A DNA stretch of 64,000 nucleotides from Zootoca vivipara (GCF_963506605.1 NC_083288.1:53692001-53756000), one strand, 5' to 3'; shown: positions 12,627 to 31,300, numbered from the stretch's first letter. Notes: generated by a model not told the origin, from the letters alone. Made by a program: numbers and translations.

Positions 12627-12724
12627 CGGCAGGGACGTGTCCACTTTGTCCAGGCGGGGTTGGAAGGAGCCCTTGTCTGTGGTGGAGCTGTCTTGCTCGC
12701 TGCTCATGCTGCTGTAAGGGTCTT
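12627..12724 (-). CDS. Mucin cytoplasmic exon (EDPYSSMSSEQDSSTTDKGSFQPRLDKVDTSLP)
   Basis: cacag acceptor, GT donor, phase 1->0; FxxxLxxVDT motif of MUC3-family tails. Confidence 0.8.
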
Positions 12725-13412
12725 CTGTGCAAAGGGCGAAGGAGGGAGAGGGAGCATATCAGTCATTTTTAAAGATTTGTTGGCCTCTTTCAAAAGGGCT
12801 TCCTCTTGCCCCAGCCCAGCCTCTCCACTTGCCCACCCAGACCTCTTCCAAGAAGGGAGGGAGCCACAGAGCCAGCTAGAACCTGCTTTATTTTTACAAA
12901 CTGCATCTTCAAAGCTCTGGCAAGCAAAGTGGTCTTCCCTGTTGTGATAATGCAGCCCGTAATCAGGGCTGACGCTCATCCTCCCGCTCAGGTGCCTAGC
13001 GCTCCCTCCCAGAGCACAGAGTACATGAGAACCCCCACATATTATTTATTCATTTATATTTCCCCCCTCCTCCTCCTGGATCAGGGCGGGTTGGGGTGGC
13101 AGAGCATGTAAAGCCCTTCTGTCTGATTGCAGTTTGGGGACGTGGCTGTGTTTGACCTCCCCTGTTGCTCTTCACTTCCCTTTCTTATTTCCTTATTTCT
13201 GCCCGTGGGGTGAAATGTTTCTGTGCAACTTGACCCCTTCTGCAACCCCAGACCACCTGTAATCCAATTAACCTGCTGCTTCCTTCCAGGGCAAGGCAAG
13301 GAACATCCTCTGGGATGGAGGCTGGCAGCTGCCGTGGAAACCCGGGCTTACCACCACCACCACCACCACTCGCAAGACCTCCCCTTCCTGACCTAGGCCT
13401 TGTGTCACATAC

Positions 13413-13534
13413 CACCTGCTGCAGAGCTGCTGCTTTCCATTGCTGGGGCACTTGGATCAGGGCCTTCAGGACGAGCCACCCAGTCGGGCTCGTTTTCATA
13501 CCACCTCTCTTCATCGGGAGGCAAATGCATCAGC
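13413..13534 (-). CDS. Mucin cytoplasmic exon (LMHLPPDEERWYENEPDW...)
   Basis: ttccag acceptor, GTATGT donor, phase 2->1. Confidence 0.8.
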
Positions 13535-13672
13535 CTGGAAGTGGGAGACCAAGAGAGGCCATCAGGGCAAAGGTCTCTCCTTTGGCCCATTTCGAGGGCA
13601 GCTTCCAGTTAAAACAGCAGAGACTGACCGAGTTGACAAGACTTTGAGTGTGGGCTCAAAGTCTCCTCCTAC

Positions 13673-13846
13673 CTGTGTCCTTTCTCCTTCCGGCAACAGC
13701 GCCTCCAGCAGAGAAGCACGGCCAAGACCAGGATGATCAGCAGCAGCGCCGCCAGGCCCAGGGCCACCCCCACGGCCACCCCCACCTTGCTGATGCCTTG
13801 CTCACAGCGGTGGCCCACGAACCAGTAGGACTCTGACTGCTCACAG
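13673..13846 (-). CDS. Mucin exon: end of EGF2, transmembrane helix and basic stop-transfer
   Basis: CEQSESYWFVGHRCEQGISKVGVAVGVALGLAALLLIILVLAVLLCWRRCCRKEKGH; AG/GT boundaries, phase 2->2. Confidence 0.92.
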
Positions 13847-14112
13847 CTGTGGGAGGAAAGGCAGCATCAAAAACCTGCAAGGAGGCAGGTAATGGGGCCC
13901 AGGATGCCTGGGTTTTTTACGGGGTGGGGAGCAGGGGGTGTTTCTGATGCTGCGTTACGGGGGGGGGGGGCTGAGTGGCATCCAGGGCCCTAATCCAAGG
14001 TAGGAGTGGTGGTGACTGGTGCCCATGGGGAATTGCACCAATTTTCGTTCCCCTGTGCCACAGCCCCAGATCCTTTGCCACCACCCACTTCACCCCCTGG
14101 CTTGCTACTCAC

Positions 14113-14290
14113 TAGCAACTGGGCCCCCCAGGGGTGACATAGCAGTTTCCGTTCACACAGCTGAAGGGGTCGGGGTGCCAAACACTGCAGTTAGAGACAC
14201 ACTGGAGGTCGCCACTGACGTTTCGTGCCATGTAAAATTGCTGGATGTTTTGTGCCACCACAGAGGAGTTCTTGCACACACTTGACAGAT
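14113..14290 (-). CDS. Mucin module B Cys-rich/EGF2 exon
   Basis: DLSSVCKNSS...LQCVSNCSVWHPDPFSCVNGNCYVTPGGPSC; 178 nt; GTGAGT donor. Confidence 0.9.
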
Positions 14291-14626
14291 CTGGAAAGGG
14301 AAAGGAAGGACACATTGGGGGCCCTGAATACCTCCCTTGTTCTTCCTCATCCTGCTTTCTTCCCCACCAACTATGATGGCGACTGATGGCCCTAGGATTA
14401 GCCTCTGTGCATCTCATATGTGACTGCACATGCAGAATCCTGGCAACATCTGTACCATCCAGCGGTGCCACAAGGTGTACGGGGGTTCATTGCATTTGTT
14501 TGCATGTGGTGGCCATGTTTTCTTGCTCATACGGCTCCACCGCCTCCATCCAGACAGCCCACTGCAGCTCTTCAACATTAGGAATGTGTTAAGCCCCACA
14601 CCGACCCCTCCCACCCCAGTCCTCAC

Positions 14627-14683
14627 CTTCAGGGCTCAGGGGCACTGCAGTCACATTACGCTCTCCAGTAAACCAAAGTGAAT
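14627..14683 (-). CDS. Mucin module B post-SEA linker exon (DSLWFTGERNVTAVPLSPE)
   Basis: 57 nt, phase 1->1, paralogous to 21382-21441. Confidence 0.85.
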
Positions 14684-15599
14684 CTGAAGGAGAGGGGGAA
14701 AGTAAAGGTGAGGGACATCCAAGGGGAGGGGGAGCACCCAAGGGGAAGGACCTCTTCCCCCACCCACCAGCCATGCCTCCCTGCCACCAGAGTTGAAGGA
14801 AACACACTTCCTCTGCTCGGCCATATGTCCAACCAGCAACCTGACACTCATCTCTGTGTGGGCAAGGGTGAAGCAGTTGGGGTTGGTTGATGTTACAGGG
14901 GCAGCTGCTGGTAACAGAGAGATGGGTCTGAACCCTCACCCCACAGCATGGATAACACCAGGATAACACCAGGTTGCGTCAGATTAGGCATAGATGAAAC
15001 TTGTTCCATATGGCAGTGAAATTGGAAGACTAGGGAGACTTTGATTGGCACCTTTTTGGACAATGTTCCTCTGTTCCTCACCATACAGGACAAACCCAGT
15101 ACCGGTAGGTAGCCTCAGATATGACGTAGATGAAGTACATTCTATTCTTAATGCCTGTTTTTCTCCGGGTGATTTCTAAGGGATAGCTCTGTCCCTAGCA
15201 AAACAGCGTATGGTAATTGCTTGGTTCAGGAGAGTGGGGATGGGCTTGGACTCAGTGGAGCTGCTCAGCTTCTGCAGAGAACTGGTACATCGGCCATCTC
15301 ACAGCCTGTTTTGGGGTTACCACATTGGGAGCCCCATCCGGTGCATGTTGATTCAGGGGTACACACAGTTGTGATGCTGGTGCAATTTACTCCCAAATAA
15401 GGAGGGACAGAATCACAGCCCTTGGATGACTTCTGCTTCCTCATGACAGCTGATCTGAAGACGCTTAATAAGAAGCCTTTCCTTCTGCTCCATTAGATGG
15501 ATGGAATGTAGTGTAAACGTTTGCAACATTCATGCCATATTTGGGCTCCTTCAGCTGCCAGCCAGACCTTCCCACAAGAAGTGGCAGGTGCCTCCTCAC

Positions 15600-15730
15600 C
15601 GTTGCCATTGGAAGTGTAATTCTTTTTCAGGGTCTGTTTGAGGTCCTTCATGGATTCATCGTAGGAAGCATTGAAGTCTGAGAAGTGAAGCTGCAGGAGC
15701 ACCTCATGGTCCACGATAACACTACCATTG
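15600..15730 (-). CDS. Mucin module B SEA exon 3 (NG|SVIV cleavage motif)
   Basis: SNGSVIVDHEVLLQLHFSDFNASYDESMKDLKQTLKKNYTSNGN; 131 nt. Confidence 0.92.
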
Positions 15731-15905
15731 CTGAGAAGAGGCAGCAGGAAGGAAGAGGGAGAAATCACTTAGCCACAACTGCAAAGGTGCCCTCAGCTAG
15801 CCTGATGTGAGGTGAATTATGCTAGTGGGCCAGGGGATTGCGTGGCACCAAGCAGCACCCTCCCTCCCATACTTGGTCCCCAGCTGTATCACTTCGGTGA
15901 CTCAC

Positions 15906-15964
15906 CTCAGCCGAATCACCTTTACTCCCATGTAGCCAGGAACGTCCACATAGAAGATGTTCAT
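15906..15964 (-). CDS. Mucin module B SEA exon 2
   Basis: MNIFYVDVPGYMGVKVIRL; 59 nt, phase 0->2. Confidence 0.9.
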
Positions 15965-16497
15965 CTGCAAGGAGAGAGGGGTCTCATCTCAGCTGCATAG
16001 ACAGCAACAGTCGGACGCACCAACCAAAAGCAGGGTCTGCACATTGGCAGCAGAGCAGCTGCTGTCTGCAAGCATCACCAGCCCTCTGTATCTACTCAGA
16101 CAGAGCGTGGCTTTGAGGTGTGTGTGAGCAGTCCTAGAATCATAGAACCATAGAGTTGGAAGGGACCTGAGGGTCATTTGGTCCAATCCCTGTCATACTG
16201 GCATTTTCACAGCAGCAGAAACAAGAAAACGTCTATGTAGGGTATGAACCATCAAATCTAAGCTACATACAGTATTGTAGAAGAAACAGCTTTCTATACT
16301 CATCTGATAGCTACATTTCCACATCTGGATATCTAGGTGTTCCTGATTGTGTTTCCAGATGTGCTAAGCGGACAAATCTCTGTTAATGAAGGAATGGCAC
16401 GTTAACGGGACCCAGACTCAAAAGTAACAATAGGTCTGCCTGGAAGTGATCACTTTCCTGAGAGGGCGTCCTCTATGCACACCCAACCACCCCTCAC

Positions 16498-16616
16498 CTG
16501 TTCCACAAAGATCTTCACAAATGTCTTGAAGGCAGAGGAGCTGGGATTCACCATCTCTGGGCTGAACTTCCAATTCTTCACTGTTACAGAGACATTGATT
16601 GTGGCCTCAACAGTCA
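16498..16616 (-). CDS. Mucin module B SEA exon 1
   Basis: VTVEATINVSVTVKNWKFSPEMVNPSSSAFKTFVKIFVEQ; 119 nt, phase 1->0. Confidence 0.9.
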
Positions 16617-17268
16617 CTGTGATCAGAAAGCACAAGTCATTAAACATGAAGGTACAGCCACAGTTTCAGAGTCCATTTGTGAGGATGAGCACTTCAGGTG
16701 TTCATTGAGTCACAGGAGAATTGCAGTGATCATGGAAACAACATGAACCACCTATGGATCCACCCCAAAGGGTGCAGAGAAAGGGCGCTGGTACAGGGTG
16801 TGAAATACACTGGAATGTGCGTGTATCAGCTCAGTGTAGTCTACTTTAGCTGACACAAACTCTCCAAGTCCTGAGGCAGGTGACATTCTTGTCCATCTGC
16901 TGCTGTGCTGCTGCTGCTGCTGCTGCTATCAGAAGCTATTAGTAAGCACAGGTGAAGAGGAAAACCCCACAGACCCAGGCTTTCTAGGCATGTGGACAAG
17001 CCTGAGTAGATTGTATCTACTAAGATACAACCAGTTTTATACACGGTTGGTATGTAAGTCATCTGCATCCAGAAAAGGTAAAGTTCTATATCAAACCATC
17101 CATGCGTGGCTGAAATTTTCAAATCAGGCATTTTTCACCCGAAGGGATAACCACAACTACACAACCTCCCAGTTGCATGGTGAAGGGAGCACAATGCTGC
17201 CATGCCCTTTATCTCTCCCCTGCCCCCATCATGGTCTTGTTGAAAGGGGTTGCAGCACTTAGGTAGCC

Positions 17269-17572
17269 CAGGCATGTCCAACAGGTAGATCGTGATCTAC
17301 CAGTAGATCACTGGACGTCTGCGGTAGATCACTGGTAGATCATTGGCTCCCCCCAAAGAAGCTGAACAACTGTGGCTCCCCTTAAAAAAGCTGAACATTT
17401 TACCTCCTCCCGGAAAAAAACTCAACAACTTTGACCCCCCCCCCAAATGGGCCTTACTCCTTCCTAAAAAAAGCTCAACAGTTCAACAACTTTGACCCGA
17501 ACCTCAAAAAGCGGGTAGATCACTGCCAACTCTATGAGTAGATCGCAGTCTTTTGGGAGTTGGCCACCCCTG
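17269..17572. mobile_element. hAT (Charlie-like) non-autonomous element
   Basis: Termini caggcatgtccaac / gttggccacccctg; repeated subterminal gtagatc motifs; imperfect flanking ggtagccc/agtagccc duplication. Confidence 0.65.
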
Positions 17573-19723
17573 AGTAGCCCATCAAGAAACCATCCACAAG
17601 GGTATTGCTTTGTTCTCCCCAGCCCTGCAGGCTGGATGCTTCTCCCTGTTAAGTTTGCACAGGCTTGCCACCTCAGGTAGCACTTGGGAAGCGTCTTCCC
17701 ATTGACAACTCCTGTCTCTTTGGGGTGAAAAGACACCTTGTGAGGATGAACCTGTCAGATGTCTGCACAGTTGCAGGATAATTTGCAGTGATAATGGGAA
17801 CAACATGGATTGCCTTTGGATCCACATCAAAGAGTTCAGAGAATGAGTGCGAATACAGGTGTGAAATGCACTGGAACCTGCCCATCTCAACTCGATGTAG
17901 TCTCCTCTGAGTGGCAATTGCCGTACTCTCCAGGGCCTGAAGCAGACAAGGCTCTTGCTTACTGTGCGCTGCTTGTTGGCATCTGTTTGTCTCCAGAGAC
18001 ATTATGGCAAGCATCTCTGGGGTGAAGTCTAACCGTGCATTAGCAGCCCCAAAGGAAGCCTGGGCAGTGTGTATGGAGGCTCTGGGTTGGCCAGACGGCA
18101 AATCGCCCCCCACCCCACCCCAGCCTCACTGGTGCAGTCCAAAGGAAAGCAGAGGAATACGCTTGGCACCAGCTTGGCTGCAGGAGTTGGCAGAAGGAGG
18201 CGTACAAGGCACCATCCAACCGTCTTAAGGACTCCACTCTGGGTTTGTGTATGGTTTACTCCTCAGCCTTTCCTTCTTCCAAAGATCTCCCACAAGACAG
18301 CAGAGGTTTGGCACCAGAGTTTTCCTTCTCCTAGATTAGCTACCTTCCCAGGTTGTTTAGCTCCATGTGCTCCTCATTTCCCTCTACATCACATGCAGAA
18401 ACTGCCTTCATGACCATTGGACCCCACTATTGGTCTTGTCTGGTCAATCTGCTGGAGCCTGTCCTTGCATGCAGGGGAAGTCCCTAACTCCCTGAGGGTC
18501 TGAGACCCACTGGCCATCCTAATTTGGTTTAGCCGGCCAGGTGGTTGCTGTCCCATGCTAACAGCTTCCAGGAGCCACAGTTGAGAGCTGAGTGCAGGGT
18601 GGAGACCAAAGTGGACAAACTACCCCAGAGGGAGCATGACGTGTCTCTCACTGGAGTTACTACCCCTCCCCTAACACCCCAGACACCCCCACCTGCTGCT
18701 ACTGGAAGCTTTTTAAACTGTAGGCAACAGGGAGGTGCCATAGAACAAAAACACCATTTTGGATTAGCAAGCTAGGTCACCTTTCCTTGCAAACTTGACT
18801 AAATAAACTATATACCTTATACAGCTTCCAATGTGCCACCAGTTTCACACACTGTTGATATGCAAGCCATCAGCATCCAGAAAAGCTGCCATTCTATCTC
18901 AACTCACATCCATGGGGGCTGCAAACCTTTCCCTTCTTTCTAAGTATTGAAAGAAACTTTAAATCTCACCATGGACAGAATTCCCTTTGCAAAATGAGAG
19001 TGCAGGCAAGGGAAGGTCAGAGTGGACCCCCAACCTGTGGCCTCCAGATGTTGGGCCAGAACTACTCATCCTCCCCGGCCATTGGCCATGTTTGCTGGGG
19101 CAGAGGGGAGCCGGGAGCCCAAGAGAACAACATCTGGAGGACACCAGGCTATGGAAGGCTGTCCTGGCCCTAGGCTTCCATGGAAAAAATGGTCAGCATG
19201 GCAGAGAAGCAAGATCACTCCCAAGAGTGGCAGGTGGTCATTGGACTAAGGGGACTAGCCTAGTCCCCTAAATGGTCCCCTGGAGCCTCCTTGGCAAAGC
19301 CTGGGAAGCTTCTGCCTGGCTTAGGGAGGGAGGTGAGAGGCTCCGATGGGTCCAAGATCTGTCCTGTCATCTTCCCAGAGCCCATCTGGCTTTTGGAAGG
19401 AGGCAAGTGGCTCCAGCATCCTGTCAGGGCCCTGTCACCTCCTTTGCAAAGGAGGGAAGATTCTACCTGGCTCAGGGAGGGAAGCGTGATGCTCATGTGT
19501 GCAGTGTCAGGATGTCGCTTGCATGACATTGATCTCCCACACCCCTCACAAGCTAGAGCCTCTGGCCCTAACTGTTCCCCTATGAAAAATTTCACCGCAC
19601 AACACTGAGTGGCCCAACAACACAAAACAAAGTCTAGAGCCTCAGAGCCATAGATTCAGCCCACTCTTTTCAAATGGAAAACTTGTGAGCAGGGAGTCTT
19701 GTCCGAATAATGCTCAGACTTAC

Positions 19724-19849
19724 CCACTTGGACTTCATTTTCTGCCTCTTCACAACGTCGCCCAGTATAGGGAGGTGGGCACTGACAACGACCCCCGACT
19801 AACACTCCTCCATTAAGGCACGTAAGAGGGACAGCTGTGGTGGAAGGAG
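19724..19849 (-). CDS. Mucin module B EGF1 exon
   Basis: PSTTAVPLTCLNGGVLVGGRCQCPPPYTGRRCEEAENEVQV; 126 nt; GTAAGT donor. Confidence 0.9.
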
Positions 19850-20373
19850 CTGAGCAAGAGGAAGAGAACAGAGCATAGCCAAAATTTAAGAACATATTTA
19901 CCAAGGAGCCCTCATATATGACAATGATGTTGATGATCCAACAATTTATATGCTGTACTGCTTAATGGTATTATTTCTAAGAAGTGTCCAGTGAGGGTTC
20001 AAGAGCGATTCAAGTGATCAATTAGATTTCATCAGAAAATCAAAAAGTGTTGCTTAAACTGCTTGCTGAAACCAGCAAAGCCTCTATAGGTGCCTGAAGT
20101 TCAGTCAACAAGAGGTCTCAGCCAAGAGATAGTTCCACAATTCTAAACACACAGCTCACGCGGGATGTGAGCTGTGTGCCTGAGTCATGGAGGACCACTT
20201 AGAGCCTCTCCCACAAAGACGGGAGTGATCTAACAACGCACTAAGCAGTATTGAAGAAATCCTGGATCAGGTTAAGGCACCGAAACATATGCACAGCACG
20301 TGTAAACTGTTGAGCCCTGTAATACTGTGCTGGCAGATAAACATCATTTCCATATGAATATATAGATACATAC

Positions 20374-20558
20374 CAGCGGAACTTGTAGGCTGTGAACTAG
20401 TAGATGTGCGTCCACGAGTAGTAGTGGAAGGGGAAGATTCCTTTATGGTGGATATTTTTGTAGAAGTATAAGCAGAAGGTGTTGTGGTTCCATACACAGA
20501 AGGTGTTGTTTTCAAATTTGTAGAAATGGATGTTTCACTTGTTGTGCTTGGTGTCCCC
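20374..20558 (-). CDS. Mucin short PTS linker exon between modules A and B
   Basis: cccttctag acceptor (phase 2), GTATGT donor (phase 1); GTPSTTSETSIST...SSPSTTTRGRTSTSSQPTSSA; its 3' half is paralogous to the end of the giant exon. Confidence 0.75.
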
Positions 20559-20689
20559 CTAGAAGGGATAGGCAACAAATTGTATTGGACTATTTTTTTT
20601 TAATGCACGTAACTATTCACCACTGATAGTGCTTATTGGACCAGCCTAGAGGGACCCGCCTAGAGGGACCTCATTTTCCGGGCAGAATG

Positions 20690-20990
20690 ATGGGGGTGAA
20701 GATGCTCCTTCAGGTATACTGGACCGAGGCCGTTTAGGGCTTTAAAGGTCAGCACCAACACTTTGAACTGTGCTCGGAAACGTACTGGGAGCCAATGTAG
20801 GTCTTTCAAGACCGGTGTTATGTGGTCTCGGCAGCCGCTCCCATCACCAGTCTAGCTGCCGCATTATGGATTAGTTGTAGTTTCCGGGTCACCTTCAAAG
20901 GTAGCCCCATGTAGAGCGTATTGCAGTGGTCCAAGCGAGAGATAACTAGAGCATGCACCACTCTGGTGAGACAGTCGGTGGGCAGGTACC
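20690..20990 (-). mobile_element. L2-type LINE fragment
   Basis: VVHALVISRLDHCNTLYMGLPLKVTRKLQLIHNAAARLV; same family as 59410-60200. Confidence 0.8.
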
Positions 20991-21030
20991 ACGTCTCCAC
21001 TCCCTCCTTCATCCCCGGCATGCTACTCAC

Positions 21031-21208
21031 TGGCATTGAGGCCCCTCAGAGGTGATGTGGCACTTTCCATTCACACAGTGGAATGGGTGGGGGTTCCAAG
21101 CGCTGCAGTTAGAGACACACTGAAGTGTGTTGTTGATGACCTGCGCCACATAATATGGCTGGAGGTTGTGTGCCACCACTGAGACATTCTTGCATTCGTC
21201 TGACAGAT
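21031..21208 (-). CDS. Mucin module A Cys-rich/partial EGF2 exon
   Basis: DLSDECKNVS...LQCVSNCSAWNPHPFHCVNGKCHITSEGPQC; 178 nt; GTGAGT donor, phase 2. Confidence 0.88.
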
Positions 21209-21381
21209 CTGGGAATGGAAAAGGAGGGAGAAGGGTCACCAAGGAAGAATGCAAATGCCTCACAATGCCCCATGCATGGGACCAAGAGAACAAAAGAGGA
21301 GCCTGCTTGGCTGCTGGATCATCATCATCAATATATACTTATACCCCACACACCAACCCCATCGCACACCTCAGTCCTCAC

Positions 21382-21441
21382 CTTCGGGGCTCAGGGGCAC
21401 TGCGGTCACACGAGATGCTCCTTCAGTAAAGCAGAGCTGAT
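21382..21441 (-). CDS. Mucin module A post-SEA linker exon (DQLCFTEGASRVTAVPLSPE)
   Basis: 60 nt, phase 1->1. Confidence 0.85.
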
Positions 21442-21924
21442 CTAAAGGAGACGGGGAAAGCAAAGGTGAGGCTTCTGAAAGGAAGAAATCACTGGGGGTG
21501 GGGGGTGGGGCATCGATGGGGAGGGACCTCTTCTTCTGCTCCTGCCCCCACCAGTTATGATTCCCTGCCACCAAGGTTGAAGGAAGCACACCTCTTCCGA
21601 CAGGAAGCAACCTAACATCCATCTCTATGTGGGCATGGGAAAATCAGCTGTGGTGGGTTGATGTTTCAGCACAGCTGCTGGGGTAACAGAGAAGGGTTTC
21701 CACCCGGACTGCTCAGCCTGGATGGATGACACTAGGTGGCCTCAGATATGGCATAACTGAGGCGCATTCTATTCTATTATAGATGGATGGAATATAGTAC
21801 AAGAGTTGCCTTGCAACATTCTCTGTTTAGGGAAGTTTTTAATGGTTGTTGTTTTATTCTGTTTTTAATCTGTTGGGAGCCACCCAGAATGGCTGGGGAA
21901 ACCCAGCCGGATGGGTGGGTATAA

Positions 21925-21956
<32 letters not shown>

Positions 21957-22029
21957 CGCCAAGGATATCCTTGGGCTCCTTCAGCTGCCAGCCAGACCTT
22001 CCCACAATATGCGGCAGGTGCCTCCTCAC

Positions 22030-22160
22030 CTCTGTCATTGGAAGTGCAATTATTTTGCAAGGTCTGTGTGAGGTTCTTCATGGAAGCATTGTAAGAAGCA
22101 TTGAAGTCTGAGAAGTGAAGCTGCAGGAGCACCTCGTGGTCCACGATAACACTGCCATTG
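22030..22160 (-). CDS. Mucin module A SEA exon 3 (NG|SVIV cleavage motif)
   Basis: SNGSVIVDHEVLLQLHFSDFNASYNASMKNLTQTLQNNCTSNDR; 131 nt. Confidence 0.92.
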
Positions 22161-22375
22161 CTGAGAAGAGGCAGCAGGAAGGAAGAGGGAGAAATCACTT
22201 AGCCACAACCGAAAAGGTGCCCTCTGCCAGCCTGATGTCAGGTGAATGATGCTAGTGGGGAGTGTCAATTAAAGGGTCATGGCCTCTCACAGCAGGGGGC
22301 CAGGAGATTGCGTGGCACCAAGCAGCACCCTCCCTCCCATACTTGGTCCCCAGCTGTTTCTATTCTGTGACTCAC

Positions 22376-22434
22376 CTCAGCCGAATCACCTTTACACCCG
22401 TGTAACCAGGAATGTCCGCATATAAGATGTTCAT
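22376..22434 (-). CDS. Mucin module A SEA exon 2
   Basis: MNILYADIPGYTGVKVIRL; 59 nt. Confidence 0.9.
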
Positions 22435-23268
22435 CTGCAAAGAGAGAGAGGTCTCATCTCAGCTGCATAGACAGCAACAGATGGAAGCCACCAATCAACA
22501 GTAGTGTCTGCACATTGGCAGCAGAGCAGCTGCTGTCTACAAGCATCACCACCCCCTCCCCAACATATCAGACAGATTATGTCTTTGAGGTGCATGTCAG
22601 CAGTCCTAGAATCATACAATTGTAGAGTTGGAAGGGTCCTAAGGGTTACTGGGTCCAATCCCTGCAATGCAGGAATATCCACAGCAGCAGAAACAACAAA
22701 AAACTCTACATTTATAAGATACTGGTTTGTTGATCTGAGAAATACCAAACCCCCAATCCCAGCAGATTCTTGGTCGCTCCTGTGTGCTGAGCAGGGCATC
22801 TCTATCCTGCTCTGCTCCTGTAACTCCTCCATCCTTCCAAGACACCTTTGGGGTATCTCCTGGTCTGGGCATGGCTAGTCTGTGGCCCTCCCTCAGCTGT
22901 TGTTGGACTCCAGTTCCCAGCAGGCAGCCTGGCCAAAGGTATGGGATGATTATAAAGGCTGGAAGATGACCTTTGTCACTTTAACACTGGTCTTTCAAAA
23001 GTGACAATTAGGAAGACAGTTCCTGATGTGTGTATTAGGGTATGAACCATCCATTCTGAGGCACATATTACAGAAACAGCTTTCTATACTCATCTGATAG
23101 CTCCATTTCCAGGCATTCCAAATGAGGGAAACCTGACTGTGAATGAGCTTCACCACTGGGAAATGGAGCATGAATGAGGTCTGGACTCAGAAGTGACCAT
23201 AGGGTTTGGGTTCGGGTGTGAGAATTTTCGGGGGTATCACCTCTCTGTGCACCCCCAGCCCCCCTCAC

Positions 23269-23387
23269 CTGTTCCTCAAAGATCTTCACAAATGTCTTGA
23301 AGGCAGAGGAGCTGGAATTCACCATCTCTGGGCTGAACATCCGATTCTTCACTGTTACAGAGACATTGATTGTGGCCTCAACAGTCA
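23269..23387 (-). CDS. Mucin module A SEA exon 1
   Basis: VTVEATINVSVTVKNRMFSPEMVNSSSSAFKTFVKIFEEQ; 119 nt. Confidence 0.9.
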
Positions 23388-24703
23388 CTGTGATCAGAAA
23401 GCACAAGAGTCATCCATATATATATAAATGTAGGCATTGTGCAACCAGATGAAACAGCCTTTCTCCATAACCACTGAACCCAATTGAAACAAATTTGGCC
23501 ACAACTACCTTGCCTACCAGTGAGGGATCTGGCATAAAAATTATCAAAAAACCACACCTTTCACACCTAAAACAATGATTAAAGACAAAAAAAGTGGCGC
23601 ACAGATTATACATCAGCAGCAGAAAGCTCTGAAGACTCCAGCAGCATCCAATAGAAAGGCAGATCGCAGGCTGCTGCCTCCAAAGCCGCGCCACCAGATG
23701 ACATCACAAAATTCCACAGCAACCAACTGAAAACAGGCCTGAAGCAAGGCCCAACATTTCCCAGCAGAATGAATAGGCCGCAGCAGACCAGGCAGCTTTC
23801 CAGACTAGGCCAAGTGGAGGTAGGGGCCTGCCTGGGTGGGGGATGGGGGCCCCAAATAGGGGGCAGGGATAGGTAATGGGTCAGAACAGGGTGGGGGGAG
23901 ACACAGGGATGCACCTATGTAAACATAACACATGAAAAACAGGGGAACTCTGAAGGTGAGGGGAGTCTGAAGGGGGACTCTGAGGCTCCAATTAACAAAC
24001 TGAGCCACCGCAGGTTTTTTATGGGACTGAACAGCTCGGGCGTTTCGGAATGCGCCTTCTGTTTAATAAACACCTGGCAGCATTAGGGATTCGTTCATCA
24101 TTTCCCCTAACAAGCACTTGGGGGCATGGCGAGGGGTTTTTGCTTTTTAATTTAGCGGGCGTTGTGTCACATGCGGGGCTCCGGCGGCCATTTTAAGTAA
24201 GGGCAGTCGTGCACCTCTTAACCTAGGCTTCAGCCCCCCCCCCCGCCCTCGATTTACAATCCCCTACCTTCCCCTTGCCACTTCCTGGGTTTTTTATGGA
24301 ACCGAAGAGCTCGAGCGCTTCGGAACACGCCTTCTGTTGCTACGGGGCTGTGGGGCTTCGCTATTTGACTCCCCCCCATCGGGTTTATTACCACAATTAC
24401 AAATCCTCCCTGGCCATTGGCCACGCTCACTGAGGCAGATGGGAGGATAGCCATGTCTGGAGAGCACAAGGTTAGGGGAGGCTGGCTTGGGCACTCCTGT
24501 CTCAAGACTTCAACAGAGAAACATCCAAGTAATCAAAGAAGCAAGATCACTCCCAGCAATGTAAAACAGGAGGTTTTAAGCCGCAGGACCACAAATATTG
24601 TCCAGCTAGAAAATTACGACACGTACCTGGACATTCCTGAGCTTTTGTTTTCAAAGGAAGAGCCAAAGGGTGGGAGGCTTGTACTAATAATGCTCAGACT
24701 TAC

Positions 24704-24829
24704 CCACTTGGACTTCATTCTTTGCCTCTTCGCAACGCTGCCCAATATAGGGAGAAGGACAGTGACAACGACCCTCGACAAGCACTCCTCCATTAAGGCA
24801 CCCGAGAGGGGCAACTGTGGTGGAAGAAG
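24704..24829 (-). CDS. Mucin module A EGF1 exon
   Basis: SSTTVAPLGCLNGGVLVEGRCHCPSPYIGQRCEEAKNEVQV; 126 nt. Confidence 0.9.
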
Positions 24830-25378
24830 CTGGATAAGAGGAAGAAAACAGAACATTAACAACATTTTTTTAAAAAGCCAACAAAAGAGCCCTCATATCA
24901 GGATCCAACAATTTATATGCTCTACCACTGAAAGTGATTATTTCTAAGAATGTCCAGTGAAGGTGCAAGAGCAATAAAAATGATAAATTCAATTAGAATT
25001 TATCAGAAAATAAAAAAGTGTTGCCTAAAGTGCTTGCTGAAAGCAACAAAGCCTCTACAGGTGTCTGACGTTCAGTAAAGAAGAGGTCTCAGCCAAGAGA
25101 TAGTTCCACAGAACTGGGCCATAATTCTGAACACAGACCTCATGCGGGATGCCTAACGCATGGGGAACCACTTAGAGCCACTCCCACAAAGACGGGAGTG
25201 ATCTATCAGGGATATAACGCATCAAACGGTATTGAAGATTTTTTAAAGGCCTTACAAATTAATACAATAACTTTGTAGTTGGCCCAGTAGCATATGGGCT
25301 GCATGTGTAAACTGTTAAGCACTGGAATTATGTGCTGGGAGATAAACATCATTTCCATATGATTACACAGATACTTAC

Positions 25379-28300
25379 CAGATGAAGTTCTAAGCTGTGA
25401 ATTAGTTGATGTGCGTCCACGAGTAGTGGTGGAAGGTGAAGATGCCTTGGCGGTGGATATTTTGGTAGTAGTATAAGCAAAAGGCGTTAATGTAGTGGGC
25501 AACAATGTTGGGGTCATTTCTGATATGCTAGTAGTAGAGTGTGTGGTTATGGTCTCAGTGATGGATGCAGATGATAATGTTGTATTGGAAGTGATTTGTG
25601 CAACAACAGTGGTAAAAGTCTCTGTACTTCTTTCAAGGGATGTTGATAAATGAGATGTTCCACTAGGAGCAATTTCAGTGCTAGCAGATCCATGATAGGT
25701 TGTGGAAGTTGTAAGCAGTGAGGAGCTCCCTTCTGGTGTACGGGAGTAATCAATTGTGGTGTTGGTGCTAGCAGATATCATGGCTGCAGTTGTCTCAGAT
25801 TGCTCAGAACTGGAAGTAAAAGGGGTGATGGATGAAATAGGTGTTGTGGTCTCACTAGTTGTGGTTGTAGTTTCAGAAGTCAGCACACTGGAGGAGGCAG
25901 ACATTGTTGACCGAGAAGAGAGCTGTTTTGTGGAGGGTTGCTCAGTGGTGGAAGAAATAGACATCACTGTGTACTCAGATGAGGTTTCTTGTTGTGTAGT
26001 CTGCTTCACGTGCTCAGTGGGTGTGTTTGTGCTTGAAGTCAGTGTGGGTGCAGTCGTCTCAGAAGGCTCAGAACTGGAAGTAAAAGGAGTCACGGATGGA
26101 GTGGGTGTCGTACTCTCAGTAGTAGTGCTTGTACTTTCAGAGGTCAACTCACTGGAGGATATGGACAATGTTGACTGAGAAGACACCTCTGTTGTGGATG
26201 ATTGTTCAGTGGTGGAAGAACTAGACATCATTGTGTACTCAGATGAGGTTCCTTGTGGTGTAGTCTGCTTGAAGTGCTCAGTGGGTGTGTTTGTTCTTGA
26301 AGTTAGTGTGGGTGCAGTAGTCTCAGAAGGCTCAGAACTGGAAGTAAAAGGAGTAATGGATGGAGTAGGTGTTGGACTCTCAGTAGTAGTGTGTGTAGTT
26401 TCAGAGGTCAACTCGATGGAGGAGGCAGACATTGTTGACTGAGAAGACAGCTGTTTTGTGGAGGGTTGCTCAGTGGGGGAAGAAATAGACATAACTGTGT
26501 ACTCAGATGAGGTTCCTTGTGGTGTAGTGTGCTTGAAGTGCTCAGTGGGTGTGTTGGTGCTTAAAGATAGGAAGGGTGCAGTCGTCTCAGAAGGCTCAGA
26601 ACTGGAAGTAAAAGGAGTAATGGATGGAGTAGGTGTCGTACTCTCAGTAGTAGTGCTTGTACTTTCAGAGGTCAACTCACTGGAGGATATGGACAATGTT
26701 GACTGAGAAGACACCTCTGTTGTGGATGATTGTTCAGGGGTGGAAGAACTAGACATCACTGTGTACTCAGATGAGGTTCCTTGTGGTGTAGTCTGCTTGA
26801 AGTGCTCAGTGGGTGTGTTTGTGCTTGAAGTTAGTGTGGGTGCAGTTGTCTCAGAAGGCTCAGAACTGGAAGTAAAAGGAGTAATGGATGGAGTAGGTTT
26901 CGTACTCACAGTAGTAGTGTTTGTAGTTTCAGAGGTCATCTCGATGGAGGAGGCAGACATTGTTGACTGAGAAGACAGCTCTTTTGTGGAGGGTTGCTCA
27001 GTGGTGGAAGAAATAGACATAACTGTGTACTCAGATGAGGTTTCTTGTGGTGTAGTGTGCTTGAAGTGCTCAGTGGGTGTGTTGGTGCTTAAAGATAGGA
27101 AGGGTGCAGTCGTCTCAGAAGGCTCAGAACTGGAAGTAAAAGGAGTCATGGATGGAGTGGGTGTTGTACTCTCAGTAGTAGTGCTTGTAGTTTCAGAGGT
27201 CACCTCACTGGAGGATGTGGACAATGTTGACTGAGAAGACACCTCTGTTGTGGAGGGTTGCTCAGTGGTGGAAGAACTAGACATCACTGTGTACTCAGAT
27301 GAGGTTCCTTGTGGTGTAGTTTGCTTCACGTGCTCAGTGGGTGTGTTTGTGTTAGAAGTTAGTGTAGGTGCAGTTGTCTCAGAAGGCTGAGAACTGGAAG
27401 TAAAAGGAGTCACGGATGGAGTGGGTGTTGTACTCTCAGTAGTAGTGCTTGTACTTTCAGAGATCAACTCACTGGAGGATATGGACAATGTTGACTGAGA
27501 AGACACCTCTGTTGTGGAGGGTTGCTCAGTGGTGGAAGAACTAGACATCACTGTGTACTCAGATGAGGTTCCTTGTGGTGTAGTCTGCTTGAAGTGCTCA
27601 GTGGGTGTTTTGGTGCTTGAAGTTAGTGTGGGTGCAGTTGTCTCAGAAGGCTTGGAACTCGAAGTAAAAGGAGTCACGGATGGAGTGGGTGTTGTTCTCT
27701 CAGTAGTAGTGCTTGTACTTTCAGAGATCAACTTACTGGAGGATATGGACAATGTTGACTGAGAAGACACCTCTGTTGTAGAGGGTTGCTCAGTGGTGGA
27801 AGAACTAGACATCTCTGTGTACTCAGATGAGGTTCCTTGTGGTGTCGTCTGCTTCACGTGCTCAGTGGGTGTGTTTGTGCTTGAAGTTAGTGTGGGTGCG
27901 GTTGTCTCAGAAGGCTCAGAACTGGAAGTAAAAGGAGTAATGGATGGAGTAGGTGTCGTACGCTCAGTAGTAGTGTTTATTGTTTCAGAGGTCAACTCGA
28001 TGGAGGAGGCAGACATTGTTGACTGAGAAAACAGCTCTTTTGTGGAGGGTTGCTCAGTGGTGGAAGAAATAGACATAACTGTGTACTCAGATGAGGTTTC
28101 TTGTGGTGTAGTCTGCCTGAAGTGCTCAGTGGGTGTGTTTGTGCTTGAAGTTAGTGTGGGTGCAGTTGTCTCAGAAGGCTTGGAACTCGAAGTAAAAGGA
28201 GTCACGGATGGAGTGGGTGTTGTACTCTCAGTAGTAGTGCTTGTACTTTCAGAGATCAACTCACTGGAGGATATGGACAATGTTGACTGAGAAGACACCT

Positions 28301-31300
28301 CTGTTGTGGAGGGTTGCTCAGTGGTGGAAGAACTAGACATCACTGTGTACTCAGATGAGGTTCCTTGTGGTGTAGTCTGCTTCACTTGCTCAGTGGGTGT
28401 GTTTGTGCTTGAGGCTAGTGTGGGTGCAGTTGTCTCAGAAGGCTCAGAACTGGAAGTAAAAGGAGTAATGGATGGAGTAGGGGTCGTACTCTCAGCAGTA
28501 GTGTTTGTAGTTTCAGAGGTCAACTCGATGGAGGAGGCAGACATTGTTGACTGAGAAGACAGCTGTTTAGTGGAGGGTTGCTCAGTGGTGGAAGAACTAG
28601 ACATAACTGTGTACTCAGATGAGGTTCCTTGTGGTGTAGTCTGCTTCACTTGCTCAGTGGGTGTGTTGGTGCTTAAAGATAGGAAGGGTGCAGTCGTCTC
28701 AGAAGGCTCAGAACTGGAAGTAAAAGGAGTAATGGATGGAGTAGGTGTCGTGCTCACAGTAGTAGTGTTTGTAGTTTCAGAGGTCAACTCGATGGAGGAG
28801 GCAGACAATGTTGACTGAGAAGACAGCTGTTTTGTGGAGGGTTGCTCAGTGGTGGAAGAAATAGACATAACTGTGTACTCAGATGAGGTTTCTTGTGGTG
28901 TAGTCTGCTTCACGTGCTCAGTGGGTGCATTTGTGCTTAAAGATAGGAAGGGTGCAGTCGTCTCAGAAGGCTCAGAACTGGAAGTAAAAGGAGTCATAGA
29001 TGGAGTGGGTGTTGTACTCTCAGTAGTAGTGCTTGTAGTTTCAGAGGTCACCTCACTGGAGGATGTGGACAATGTTGACTGAGAAGACACCTCTGTTGTG
29101 GATGATTGTTCAGGGGTGGAAGAACTAGACATCACTGTGTACTCAGATGAGGTTCCTTGTGGTGTAGTCTGCTTCACGTGCTCAGTGGGTGTGTTTGTGT
29201 TAGAAGTTAGTGTGGGTGCAGTTGTCTCAGAAGGCTGAGAACTGGAAGTAAAAGGAGTCACGGATGGAGTGGGTGTTGTACTCTCAGTAGTAGTGCTTGT
29301 ACTTTCAGAGATCAACTCACTGGAGGATATGGACAATGTTGACTGAGAAGACACCTCTGTTGTGGAGGGTTGCTCAGTGGTGGAAGAACTATACATCACT
29401 GTGTACTCAGATGAGGTTCCTTGTGGTGTAGTCTGCTTGAAGTGCTCAGTGGGTGTTTTGGTGCTTGAAGTTAGTGTGGGTGCAGTTGTCTCAGAAGGCT
29501 TGGAACTCGAAGTAAAAGGAGTCACGGATGGAGTGGGTGTTGTACTCTCAGTAGTAGTGCTTGTACTTTCAGAGATCAACTTACTGGAGGATATGGACAA
29601 TGTTGACTGAGAAGACACCTCTGTTGTAGAGGGTTGCTCAGTGGTGGAAGAACTAGACATCTCTGTGTACTCAGATGAGGTTCCTTGTGGTGTCGTCTGC
29701 TTCACGTGCTCAGTGGGTGTGTTTGTGCTTGAAGTTAGTGTGGGTGCAGTTGTCTCAGAAGGCTTGGAACTCAAAGTAAAAGGAGTCACGGATGGAGTGG
29801 GTGTTGTACTCTCAGTAGTAGTGCTTGTACTTTCAGAGGTCAACTCGATGGAGGAGGCAGACATTGTTGACTGAGAAGACAGCTGTTTAGTGGAGGGTTG
29901 CTCAGTGGTGGAAGAACTAGACATAACTGTGTACTCAGATGAGGTTCCTTGTGGTGTAGTCTGCTTCACGTGCTCAGTGGGTGCATTTGTGCTTAAAGAT
30001 AGGAAGGGTGCAGTCGTCTCAGAAGGCTCAGAACTGGAAGTAAAAGGAGTCATAGATGGAGTAGGTGTCGTACTCACAGTAGTAGTGTTTGTAGTTTCAG
30101 AGGTCATCTCGATGGAGGAGGCAGACATTGTTGACTGAGAAGACAGCTGTTTTGTGGAGGGTTGCTCAGTAGTCGAAGAAATAGACATAACTGTGTACTC
30201 AGATGAGGTTTCTTGTGGTGTAGTCTGCTTCACGTGCTCAGTGGGTGCATTTGTGCTTAAAGATAGGAAGGGTGCAGTCGTCTCAAAAGGCTCAGAACTG
30301 GAAGTAAAAGGAGTCATGGATGGAGTGGGTGTTGTACTCTCAGTAGTAGTGCTTGTAGTTTCAGAGGTCAACTCACTGGAGGATATGGAAAATGTTGACT
30401 GAGAAGACACCTCTGTTGTGGAGGGTTGTTCAGGGGTGGAAGAACTAGGCATCACTGTGTACTCAGATGAGGTTCCTTGTGGTGTAGTCTGCTTGAAGTG
30501 CTCAGTGGGTGTGTTTATGCTTGAAGTTAGTGTGGGTGCAGTTGTCTCAGAAGGCTCAGAACTGGAAGTAAAAGGAGTCATGGATGGAGTAGGGGTCGTA
30601 CTCTCAGTGGTAGTGTTTGTAGTTTCAGAGGTCATCTCGATGGAGGAGGCAGACATTGTTGACTGAGAAGACAGCTCTTTTGTGGATGATTGTTCAGCGG
30701 TGGAAGAACTAGACATCACTGTGTACTCAGATGCGGTTCCTTGTGGTGTAGTGTTCTTGAAGTGCTCAGTGGGTGTGTTGGTGCTTAAAGATAGGAAGGG
30801 TGCAGTCGTCTCAGAAGGCTCAGAACTGGAAGTAAAAGGAGTAATGGATGGAGTAGGTGTCGTGCTCACAGTAGTAGTGTTTGTAGTTTCAGAGGTCAAC
30901 TCGATGGAGGAGGCAGACATTGTTGACTGAGAAAACAGCTCTTTTGTGGAGGGTTGCTCAGTGGTGGAAGAAATAGACATAACTGTGTACTCAGATGAGG
31001 TTTCTTGTGGTGTAGTCTGCTTCACGTGCTCAGTGGGTGCATTTGTGCTTAAAGATAGGAAGGGTGCAGTCGTCTCAGAAGGCTCAGAACTGGAAGTAAA
31101 AGGAGTCATAGATGGAGTGGGTGTTGTACTCTCAGTAGTAGTGCTTGTAGTTTCAGAGGTCACCTCACTGGAGGATGTGGACAATGTTGACTGAGAAGAC
31201 ACCTCTGTTGTGGATGATTGTTCAGGGGTGGAAGAACTAGACATCACTGTGTACTCAGATGAGGTTCCTTGTGGTGTAGTCTGCTTCACGTGCTCAGTGG

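What the first reader, a model, noticed from the sequence alone, without database searches (positions are those of the whole stretch)
13673..25480. Transmembrane mucin with two tandem EGF-SEA-Cys modules in one reading frame (double autocleavage 'two-fuse' ectodomain)
Seen: the six-exon cassette EGF1(126)-SEA(119,59,131)-linker(60/57)-Cys-rich(178) occurs twice (module A 21031-24829, module B 14113-19849). All splice sites and frames are intact in both, but there is only one signal exon, one giant PTS exon and one TM/tail. A 185-nt PTS exon bridges A to B in phase. Both SEA domains keep LSNG|SVIV. Known: human MUC3/12/17 have one EGF-SEA-EGF unit that autocleaves at G|S and stays non-covalently associated. 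Inference: the precursor could be cut into three associated chains, giving two serial mechanical release points and staged shedding (the giant brush first, leaving a short glycosylated stalk).
Basis: partly seen in the sequence, partly recalled or inferred. Interest (0 to 1): 0.9.

Follow-up and report, generated by a model that had tools for sequence, protein, structure and literature searches.

The report
Lizard membrane mucin with two SEA modules
A gut-type membrane mucin gene of the common lizard carries an old in-frame duplication, so one messenger RNA encodes two self-cleaving SEA "breakaway" modules in series instead of the single one known from human MUC3/12/17; how the two work together is untested.

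Summary
On the minus strand, a six-exon EGF1–SEA(3 exons)–linker–Cys cassette occurs twice (A 24829–21031, B 19849–14113). Every exon has AG/GT sites, and the frame runs unbroken from the 21-kb PTS exon through A, a 185-nt PTS bridge exon (20558–20374) and B into the TM exon.

RNA confirms the key prediction. One 658-nt transcript contig with no mismatches runs A-SEA3–linker–A-Cys–bridge–B-EGF1. Raw stranded reads from two further samples cross both new junctions. No read skipping A or B was seen, but depth is low.

The spliced product is already in NCBI nr as the Gnomon model XP_034993052.1, "mucin-3B-like [Zootoca vivipara]". It is 100% identical to the window over most exons and has two Pfam SEA hits. 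A cordylid lizard model (XP_053116802.1) has the same double architecture, and a tortoise model has an internal module followed by more PTS.

Both SEA domains keep G|SVIV and are predicted to fold confidently as SEA. A three-chain, doubly cleaved protein is likely but inferred. "Staged shedding" is speculative, because two junctions in series bear the same load. I found no paper describing this. Verdict: a new variant of a known kind.

The parts
25379..46364 (-). Giant PTS (mucin-domain) exon. The open frame covers at least 6995 codons. The donor lies after 25379 and the exon leaves in phase 1.
   Evidence: ORF 25206-46364; RNA joint 25379->24829 in an X1 contig; frame check.
24704..24829 (-). 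Module A, EGF1 exon (126 nt).
   Evidence: AG/GT sites and open frame; Pfam EGF families, E 5e-6; 100% identical to XP_034993052.1 residues 196-237.
23269..23387 (-). Module A, SEA exon 1 (119 nt).
   Evidence: Pfam SEA PF01390 partial hit, E 8.5e-4; raw reads in X9 and X10 match the A letters.
22376..22434 (-). Module A, SEA exon 2 (59 nt). It ends ...VIRL plus 2 bases of the Ser codon.
   Evidence: RNA joints 22434/23269 and 22160/22376.
22030..22160 (-). Module A, SEA exon 3 (131 nt). It starts (S)NG|SVIVDH, the predicted autoproteolysis site, and carries the conserved Cys (NNCTS).
   Evidence: covered by the X1 658-nt contig from 22124.
21382..21441 (-). Module A, linker exon (60 nt) with the partner Cys (QLCF).
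   Evidence: RNA joints 21441/22030 and 21208/21382.
21031..21208 (-). Module A, Cys-rich exon (178 nt, 6 Cys). It ends after C4 of EGF2 (..GPQC) and leaves in phase 2.
   Evidence: RNA joint to the bridge exon.
20665..21030 (.). Intron between A-Cys and the bridge exon, mostly a transposable-element fragment. A second copy lies at about 59243-60075.
   Evidence: TE-like ORFs; very high RNA depth from other loci, with many variants; match at 59851-59909.
20374..20558 (-). Bridge PTS exon (185 nt, 61 codons). Its 3' part (20374-20483) is a copy of the 3' end of the giant PTS exon. The acceptor at 20558 is new.
   Evidence: 84% identity of 20286-20483 to 25291-25488. Splice sites and phase. RNA joints 21030/20557: X1 contig, 6 reads in X9, 1 read in X10. 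RNA joints 20374/19849: X1 contig, 5 reads in X9, 3 reads in X10.
19724..19849 (-). Module B, EGF1 exon (126 nt).
16498..16616 (-). Module B, SEA exon 1 (119 nt).
   Evidence: An X1 contig laid on A-SEA1 with 3 mismatches carries exactly the B letters, so the B exon is transcribed.
15906..15964 (-). Module B, SEA exon 2 (59 nt).
15600..15730 (-). Module B, SEA exon 3 (131 nt) with (S)NG|SVIVDH. The conserved Cys is replaced by Tyr (KNYTS).
14627..14683 (-). Module B, linker exon (57 nt). The partner Cys is replaced by Trp (SLWF).
14113..14290 (-). Module B, Cys-rich exon (178 nt).
13673..13846 (-). Exon holding the end of EGF2 (C5, C6: Y-CEQSESYWFVGHRCEQ), the transmembrane helix and the start of the tail.
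   Evidence: (identical to XP_034993052.1 residues 706-757); helix 725-757 in the model.
12333..13536 (-). Cytoplasmic-tail exons, about 13536-13414, 12725-12627 and 12365-12333. The C-terminus reads ..RIARPQLKRP.
   Evidence: Exact 6-mer mapping of XP_034993052.1 residues 763-847.

Best explanation
This is the MUC3/12/17-type transmembrane mucin gene of Zootoca vivipara, or a very close relative.

An old tandem duplication of about 5-6 kb copied the last ~110 nt of the PTS exon plus the six exons EGF1, SEA (3 exons), linker and Cys-rich. In the copy, a new acceptor inside the PTS remnant makes a 185-nt exon that joins module A's Cys exon (phase 2) to module B's EGF1 exon (phase 1).

Shown:
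- Both modules are spliced into one in-frame mRNA.
- The encoded protein reads giant PTS, then EGF1-SEA-truncated EGF2 (cut after C4), then 61 aa of PTS, then EGF1-SEA-complete EGF2, then TM and tail.

Inferred:
- Both SEA domains fold and self-cleave at LSNG|SVIV in the ER.
- The mature molecule is then three non-covalently linked chains: the brush (alpha), a middle piece of about 286 aa, and a membrane stub of about 262 aa.
- Under tension the two junctions act as breakaway links in series. Either may open first, so the design should raise the chance of release at a given load and give two possible release products. It does not guarantee an ordered two-step release.
For: - Sequence: the duplication is seen by self-BLAST. 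All exons have AG/GT sites, and the frame was checked codon by codon from PTS to TM.
- RNA: one 658-nt X1 contig with 0 mismatches spans A-SEA3, linker, A-Cys, bridge and B-EGF1, then runs into the first letters of a SEA1 exon. Junction 19849/20374 has 5 reads in X9 and 3 in X10. Junction 20557/21030 has 6 reads in X9 and 1 in X10. The first mate lies on the + strand, which fits a minus-strand RNA. No joint skipping A or B is listed. B-SEA1 is transcribed too.
- Independent annotation: XP_034993052.1, mucin-3B-like [Zootoca vivipara], 847 aa, is 100% identical to the window over the PTS end and most exons of A and B. It has two Pfam SEA stretches, 77 bits.
- Other species: Hemicordylus capensis XP_053116802.1 has the same double architecture with two SEA hits. 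Chelonoidis XP_032632398.1 has an internal module ending ..GPQC followed by PTS.
- Fold: in the AlphaFold2 model of XP_034993052.1, module A has pLDDT 75-93 and module B at least 90. G299|S300 and G585|S586 each lie in the turn between two long strands. The best Foldseek hits are the SEA domains of TMPRSS6 and MUC16.
- Cleavage site alignment: in the PDB, ADGRF1 SEA chain 8hc0_B ends at the Gly that aligns with G299.
- Motif: GSVIV fits 'GSxxV, x = V or I' (PMC9478142) and is close to G|S[V/I]VV (PMC13643018).
- Retention: the copies differ at dS about 0.25 and dN/dS about 0.59, with every Cys of EGF1 and of the Cys exon kept.
Against: - No protein data: cleavage at either site is untested, and a motif plus a predicted fold do not prove it.
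- RNA depth is low (1-6 junction reads per sample, tissue unknown), so minor A-only or B-only isoforms, which are also in phase, cannot be excluded.
- dN/dS of 0.59 is only moderate constraint. Module A is the more derived copy: at 52 sites where A and B differ, B matches outgroups at 27 and A at 15.
- Module B has lost a Cys pair that is conserved from frog to lizard.
- Hemicordylus has GSVNV, a poorer fit to the motif.
- The series-fuse function is reasoning, not evidence.
Confidence: 0.72

Rival explanations
1. Both modules are in the mRNA, but only one SEA works as a cleaved breakaway link. The other is an uncleaved structural spacer or a passenger left by the duplication. This would resemble SEA-1 of IMPG1/2 or most MUC16 SEA domains.
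For: - Known multi-SEA proteins have at most one canonical autocleaving SEA (PMC9478142, PMC4456727).
- dN/dS between the copies is 0.59.
- Module A is the more derived copy.
- A's EGF2 is cut after C4.
- B has lost a conserved Cys pair.
Against: - Both copies keep LSNG|SVIVDH exactly and all structural Cys of EGF1 and the Cys exon.
- Both fold confidently as SEA in the model.
- The SEA exons are the best conserved part of the unit, at 89-97% nucleotide identity.
Confidence: 0.2
2. The cassettes are used as alternatives. The main products would be PTS-A-TM or PTS-B-TM, and the A+bridge+B form would be a minor or aberrant transcript.
For: Exon phases allow A-only and B-only forms: both Cys exons leave in phase 2 and both EGF1 exons enter in phase 1. 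Read depth is low.
Against: - Every junction seen belongs to the A+bridge+B form, in three runs from at least two studies.
- No joint 25379->19849 is listed, and no loose end at 21030 is among the listed ones.
- Gnomon built the same form from its own evidence.
- Hemicordylus has the same joined form.
Confidence: 0.05
3. The two modules are an assembly artefact: a collapsed or duplicated haplotype, or two paralogous genes joined by mistake.
For: Mucin loci are often misassembled.
Against: - The copies differ by 5-27% and have different TE content.
- An RNA contig joins A-specific to B-specific sequence without a mismatch.
- An earlier NCBI model from another assembly or individual, with a few amino-acid differences in the bridge and TM exon, has the same order.
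- The window contains no N.
Confidence: 0.01

Closest known systems
Human/mouse MUC3A, MUC3B, MUC12, MUC17 (SEA-type intestinal membrane mucins, 7q22 cluster)
   Same: - A giant single-exon PTS domain.
- A juxtamembrane EGF-SEA-EGF unit.
- A cleavage motif of the G|S[V/I]VV type.
- A single TM and a short tail with the conserved ...F.P.LDKVDTS...IARP... sequence.
- NCBI names the product mucin-3B-like (PMC13643018, PMC9578598).
   Different: - There are two EGF-SEA-Cys units in series, separated by 61 aa of PTS. The literature describes these mucins as having a single SEA (PMC4456727, PMC1552070).
- The distal unit's EGF2 is cut after its fourth Cys.
- The C-terminus is ..QLKRP, not a class I PDZ motif.
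- Synteny with ACHE and TRIM56 was not tested.
MUC16 (CA125)
   Same: A membrane mucin with many SEA domains in tandem. Its SEA domains are the closest solved mucin structures to the model by fold (7sa9 and 1ivz).
   Different: - MUC16 repeats have no flanking EGF modules.
- They lack the G|SVVV motif (the penultimate domain has DSVLV).
- No cleavage was found in the last two SEA domains; cleavage is juxtamembrane (PMC4456727).
- Here both SEA domains carry the canonical motif.
IMPG1 / IMPG2 (interphotoreceptor matrix proteoglycans)
   Same: Each has two SEA domains in one mucin-like proteoglycan. IMPG2 also has EGF domains and a TM, and it is cleaved in a SEA domain into an extracellular piece and a membrane piece (PMC9478142).
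   Different: - Only SEA-2 has the GSxxV motif; SEA-1 is non-proteolytic.
- The two SEA domains are not recent duplicates of one cassette.
- No sequence relationship was tested here.
XP_053116802.1 mucin-3B-like [Hemicordylus capensis]; XP_032632398.1 mucin-3B-like [Chelonoidis abingdonii]
   Same: - Hemicordylus has the same order: PTS, EGF1-SEA-Cys (cut after C4), PTS bridge, EGF1-SEA-EGF2, TM. It shows the same mosaic: EGF1-SEA-linker 95% identical between copies, Cys exon 52%.
- The tortoise has an internal module cut at the same point and followed by PTS.
   Different: - The Hemicordylus bridge is about 100 aa and its motif is GSVNV.
- Whether its duplication is the same event is unresolved.
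- The tortoise model is incomplete at both ends.

Membership tests
SEA-type transmembrane mucins of the MUC3/MUC12/MUC17 group | [quoted passage not shown] | tested here: met
   One open frame of 7052 codons, S/T/P-rich and repetitive, at 25206-46364 on the minus strand. It is spliced to the EGF1 exon.
SEA-type transmembrane mucins of the MUC3/MUC12/MUC17 group | SEA domain (PF01390) next to the membrane, flanked by EGF-like domains | tested here: met
   - Pfam SEA on the SEA1 exons, E about 8e-4.
- Pfam SEA on the public product XP_034993052.1: 2 stretches, 77 bits, cut-off 26.4.
- EGF families on the EGF1 exons.
- The C4-x-C5...C6 end of EGF2 lies in the TM exon.
- SEA fold by Foldseek.
SEA-type transmembrane mucins of the MUC3/MUC12/MUC17 group | Autoproteolysis motif G|S[V/I]VV (or GSxxV with x = V/I) in the turn between strands 2 and 3 | tested here: met
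   Both copies read LSNG|SVIVDH. They fit GSxxV (PMC9478142). Against the stricter G|S[V/I]VV (PMC13643018), the third residue is I instead of V. In the model both G|S pairs lie between two long strands.
SEA-type transmembrane mucins of the MUC3/MUC12/MUC17 group | Actual self-cleavage, with the two chains staying associated | not testable with these tools
   This needs protein expression and N-terminal sequencing.
SEA-type transmembrane mucins of the MUC3/MUC12/MUC17 group | One SEA domain per protein, as described for MUC1, MUC3, MUC12, MUC13 and MUC17 | tested here: not met
   There are two SEA domains in one mRNA. This is the point of difference. PMC4456727 and PMC1552070 state that only MUC16 has several.
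SEA-type transmembrane mucins of the MUC3/MUC12/MUC17 group | Single TM helix and a cytoplasmic tail ending in a class I PDZ-binding motif | tested here: inconclusive
   The TM and a conserved tail are present. The C-terminus is ..QLKRP in the window and in XP_034993052.1. It is ..T-x-L/I in gecko, snake, Rhineura, Pogona and Caretta models. An alternative last exon was not excluded.
SEA-type transmembrane mucins of the MUC3/MUC12/MUC17 group | Position in the conserved cluster between ACHE and TRIM56 | not tested
   Long ORFs in the flanks gave no Pfam hit. No reference proteins for the neighbouring genes were in hand.
MUC16-type multi-SEA mucins | Tandem array of SEA repeat units without EGF modules; SEA domains lack the G|SVVV motif | tested here: not met
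   Each SEA here is flanked by EGF1 and a Cys/EGF2 exon and has G|SVIV. The similarity to MUC16 SEA is at fold level only, 16-22% identity.

The most novel reading that the evidence does not exclude
The double cassette is an old, selectively kept design of sauropsid gut mucins. It would be shared by lacertids and cordylids, and perhaps reflected in the tortoise's internal module. In this reading the two self-cleaving SEA domains have different mechanical stabilities. Module B has lost a conserved disulfide and module A has lost the C5-C6 end of EGF2. Load would then first release the 7000-residue brush at A and leave a short glycosylated stalk that still carries an intact second fuse. That would be a genuinely two-stage mechanical release or sensing device on the enterocyte surface.
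Probability: 0.2. Interest if true: 0.75.

Novelty: new variant of a known kind. Interest (0 to 1): 0.6.

Why it matters
The SEA domain of membrane mucins is thought to be a mechanical breakaway link that protects the cell membrane. Its biological role is still called elusive (PMC9578598, PMC13643018).

All well-studied cases have one cleaving SEA. The known multi-SEA proteins, MUC16 and IMPG1/2, have at most one canonical cleaving domain. A natural, expressed mucin with two canonical G|S SEA domains in series is therefore a ready-made test object:
- Does each domain cleave on its own?
- Do three chains stay together?
- Which junction opens first under force?

It also shows how an intragenic tandem duplication with a newly recruited acceptor can add a folded module inside a mucin without breaking the frame. 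Finally, it points to an unnoticed diversity of membrane mucin architecture in reptiles that so far sits only in automatic annotations.

Tried and rejected
- Exons were searched one by one by reference. The two 19-aa exons (SEA2, linker) were too short for Pfam. For whole-protein analyses I used the public protein XP_034993052.1 (P0053) that a search returned.
I therefore could not fetch genomic DNA of other squamates to look for an upstream module A in species whose models are N-terminally truncated. Absence of the duplication in Pogona, Anolis, Candoia, Rhineura, geckos and Lerista is thus not shown.
- A search for long (3.8-10 k aa) models sharing the unique end of the PTS exon found nothing. 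The two word-indexed searches scored only the 8000 candidates sharing most words and are not exhaustive.
- Dating the duplication: the Cys-exon tree (58 columns) is unresolved.
  - With fewer rows, Zootoca-A and Hemicordylus-A are sisters at weak support, 70/59.
  - Holding Zootoca A+B together is marginally rejected (p-AU 0.046). Holding Hemicordylus A+B together is not (p 0.32).
  - Pairwise identities do not show the pattern expected for orthologous B copies.
  - One event versus two is therefore left open.
- Assembly artefact and mutually exclusive splicing were considered and rejected as main explanations (see rivals).
- Pfam on flanking ORFs, intended for synteny, gave nothing. Word searches of the scan's earlier findings for 'mucin SEA' gave nothing.
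- Two multi-stretch hits of the representative search are unrelated repeat proteins: P0002 and P0016. Shark P0018 is two complete tandem genes fused in one model, each with its own TM.
- Complex prediction was not used. Association of SEA halves is within one domain and is standard knowledge.

Full report
**What is in the sequence**

The gene lies on the minus strand. A single open frame of 7052 codons (25206-46364) encodes a repetitive Ser/Thr/Pro-rich mucin domain.

Self-comparison of 13-26.5 kb shows a tandem duplication: 14088-20483 (unit B) matches 21007-25488 (unit A) in colinear blocks of 76-95% identity. The unit begins inside the 3' end of the PTS exon (20286-20483 matches 25291-25488 at 84%). 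It ends about 24 nt after the Cys-rich exon.

A codon-by-codon check of every junction shows the frame running from the PTS exon (donor after 25379) through A, the 185-nt exon 20558-20374 and B into the exon 13846-13673. That last exon supplies the final two cysteines of EGF2 and the transmembrane helix.

The Ser of LSNG|SVIV is a split AGC codon in both copies. Module A's second EGF is therefore cut after its fourth Cys (..GPQC-Q-PTS). Module B's is complete (..GPSC-Y-C...RC).

**How the searches were done**

Exons were searched singly by reference.

- The EGF1 exons hit EGF families.
- The SEA1 exons hit the first third of Pfam SEA (E about 8e-4).
- The other exons gave no informative hit, and two exons were under 20 aa and were not searched.

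Whole-protein analyses used a public protein returned by a search (see "Identity and public annotation").

One sequencing-run search and one lay of reads were allowed. I laid four runs of the same species on 19700-25480 at 97% likeness, so that B reads would not settle on A.

- A 658-nt transcript contig (X1) with no mismatch covers A-SEA3 (22124-22030), the A linker, A-Cys (21208-21030), the bridge (20557-20374) and B-EGF1 (19849-19724). It then continues with 14 letters that are the start of a SEA1 exon.
- In raw stranded RNA-seq, junction 19849/20374 is crossed by 5 reads in X9 and 3 in X10.
- Junction 20557/21030 is crossed by 6 reads in X9 and 1 in X10.
- The other A junctions and PTS->A-EGF1 (25379->24829) are seen as well.
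- The first mates lie on the + strand, as expected for a minus-strand RNA in a dUTP-type library.
- A short X1 contig that lay on A-SEA1 with three mismatches carries exactly the three B letters, so B-SEA1 is transcribed too.
- No joint that skips A or B is listed.

Depth is only a few reads, the tissues are not known to me, and contigs drop rare forms. Minor isoforms therefore remain possible.

**Identity and public annotation**

A profile of the two Cys exons, searched against 1.8 billion representative proteins, found a 1090-aa protein with two matches as its best hit. This is XP_053116802.1, mucin-3B-like of the cordylid Hemicordylus capensis.

Searching with it found XP_034993052.1, mucin-3B-like [Zootoca vivipara], 847 aa.

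- tBLASTn against the window gives 100% identity over 195 residues of the fast-evolving PTS end and over most exons of A and B. There are a few differences in the bridge and the TM exon.
- The window is therefore Zootoca vivipara or something extremely close.
- NCBI's Gnomon pipeline had already predicted PTS-A-bridge-B-TM.
- Pfam finds two SEA stretches in both the lizard proteins.
- No longer, full-length model was found.

**Structure**

I made an AlphaFold2 model of XP_034993052.1 with a 23-row alignment.

- Module A (202-423) has pLDDT 75-93. Module B through the TM helix (485-760) is mostly 90 or higher.
- The PTS, the 61-aa bridge and the tail are disordered.
- G299|S300 and G585|S586 each sit in the turn between two long strands, the position of the SEA cleavage site.
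- The best Foldseek matches are SEA domains of TMPRSS6, MUC16 (7sa9, 1ivz) and a mouse transmembrane protease (2e7v).
- By sequence, the nearest solved chain is the ADGRF1 SEA. Its separately deposited N-terminal fragment (8hc0_B) ends at the Gly aligned with G299.

The motif GSVIV fits the published rule GSxxV with x = V/I (PMC9478142). It is one conservative change from G|S[V/I]VV (PMC13643018).

**Evolution of the two copies**

Summed over five exons, dS is about 0.25 and dN/dS about 0.59.

Divergence is a mosaic:

| Part | Nucleotide identity between copies |
|---|---|
| SEA1 exon | 96.6% |
| SEA2 exon | 89.8% |
| SEA3 exon | 88.5% |
| EGF1 exon | 84.9% |
| Neighbouring introns | 79-87% |
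| Cys exon | 73% (pS 0.40) |

The flanks of the Cys exon no longer align.

Hemicordylus shows the same mosaic more strongly. PTS end plus EGF1-SEA-linker are 93-95% identical between its copies, and the Cys exon is 52% identical.

The simplest reading is an old duplication whose 5' two-thirds has since been homogenised by gene conversion. This is an inference.

Whether the Zootoca and Hemicordylus duplications are one event is unresolved. If one event, it would date to the common ancestor of Unidentata.

- The 58-column tree is weak. The two A copies are sisters at 70/59.
- Holding Zootoca A+B together is rejected only at p 0.046. Holding Hemicordylus A+B together is not rejected.
- Pairwise identities do not fit simple orthology.

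A tortoise model (XP_032632398.1) has an internal module cut at the same exon boundary and followed by at least 115 aa of PTS. Such internal modules are therefore not confined to lizards.

Other squamate models are single-module but N-terminally truncated.

At 52 sites where A and B differ, B matches outgroups at 27 and A at 15. A keeps a Cys pair conserved from frog to lizard that B has lost on two different exons.

**How it most likely works**

Shown: one mRNA, two complete EGF-SEA-Cys modules in frame, and canonical motifs.

Inferred: each SEA cleaves itself during folding. This would give three chains:
- the brush with EGF1-A and the first half of SEA-A;
- a middle chain of about 286 aa, made of the second half of SEA-A, the truncated EGF2, 61 aa of PTS, EGF1-B and the first half of SEA-B;
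- a membrane chain of about 262 aa.

No cysteine lies N-terminal of G|S within either SEA, so no disulfide would staple a cleaved junction.

Two non-covalent junctions in series carry the same tension. The molecule should therefore release more readily than a single-SEA mucin, and it can release at either point. Ordered "brush first" shedding needs A to be mechanically weaker than B, and nothing here shows that. I give the three-chain product about 0.6-0.7 and ordered two-stage shedding about 0.2.

**Comparison with what is known**

By architecture, sequence and NCBI naming this is a MUC3/12/17-type mucin. It departs from the family in two ways:
- it has two SEA modules;
- its C-terminus (..QLKRP) is not a class I PDZ motif.

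Synteny was not tested.

The papers I could search say that MUC16 is the only mucin with multiple SEA domains and that MUC1, 12, 13 and 17 have one (PMC1552070, PMC4456727). MUC16's last SEA domains are not cleaved at a G|S site (PMC4456727). IMPG1/2 have two SEA domains, of which only SEA-2 carries the motif (PMC9478142). I found no paper describing a MUC3-type mucin with two modules. The library does not hold subscription journals.

**Verdict**

The structure already exists as unremarked automatic annotations in two lizards. I class it as a new variant of a known kind, of moderate to good interest as a natural test object for the SEA breakaway-link idea. The functional story is untested.

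Noticed in passing
window 15600-15730 and 14627-14683 (module B) versus 22030-22160 and 21382-21441 (module A): A Cys pair (..C-T-S... and ..L-C-F..) is conserved in frog, alligator, turtles, most other squamate models examined and both Hemicordylus modules. Module A keeps it. In module B it is replaced on both sides (Cys->Tyr and Cys->Trp), on two different exons. Both residues lie C-terminal of the G|S site.
   Followed up: partly
window 12333-12365 (last coding exon, minus strand): The protein ends ..RIARPQLKRP. Gecko, snake, Rhineura, Pogona and sea-turtle homologues end ..T-x-L/I, a class I PDZ motif. Hemicordylus, the other species with two modules, ends ..LTHQ. Both double-module proteins thus lack the canonical PDZ ending. 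This may be chance or an alternative last exon.
   Followed up: partly
window 14088-25488: Divergence between the duplicated units is a mosaic. The SEA exons and nearby introns are 82-97% identical, while the Cys exon is 73% and its flanks cannot be aligned. The same pattern is stronger in Hemicordylus (95% versus 52% at protein level). This suggests gene conversion over the 5' part of the unit.
   Followed up: partly
window 20665-21050 and about 59243-60075: A transposable-element fragment (ORF ..LHWLPVRFRAQFKVLVLTFKALNGLGPVYLKEHL..) fills the new intron between A-Cys and the bridge exon. It draws very high RNA depth (word depth above 5000 in X1) with many variant letters, so the reads come from many copies elsewhere. 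A second copy lies near 59.2-60.1 kb on the other strand.
   Followed up: no
window 48377-51876 (minus strand): Two long ORFs of a LINE (a reverse-transcriptase-like ORF of 531 aa and an endonuclease-like ORF of 397 aa) lie upstream of the PTS exon, presumably in the first intron or upstream region of the mucin gene.
   Followed up: no
window 23560-23810: Reads in X8-X10 pile up here inside an A intron on both strands (up to 56 deep in X10). They have loose ends on both sides and an odd joint 23740->23809 with 24 foreign letters. This is most likely another dispersed repeat transcribed elsewhere.
   Followed up: no
P0014 = XP_032632398.1 (Chelonoidis abingdonii): The tortoise 'mucin-3B-like' model has PTS, then EGF1-SEA-Cys (ending ..GPQC), then PTS again. 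The repeat motif is the same before and after the module. So an internal SEA module embedded in the mucin domain also exists in a turtle.
   Followed up: partly
P0018 = XP_041034677.1 (Carcharodon carcharias): This shark model of 1501 aa contains two nearly identical complete units (PTS-EGF-SEA-EGF-TM-tail). It looks like two tandem genes fused by the annotation, not a double-module protein.
   Followed up: no
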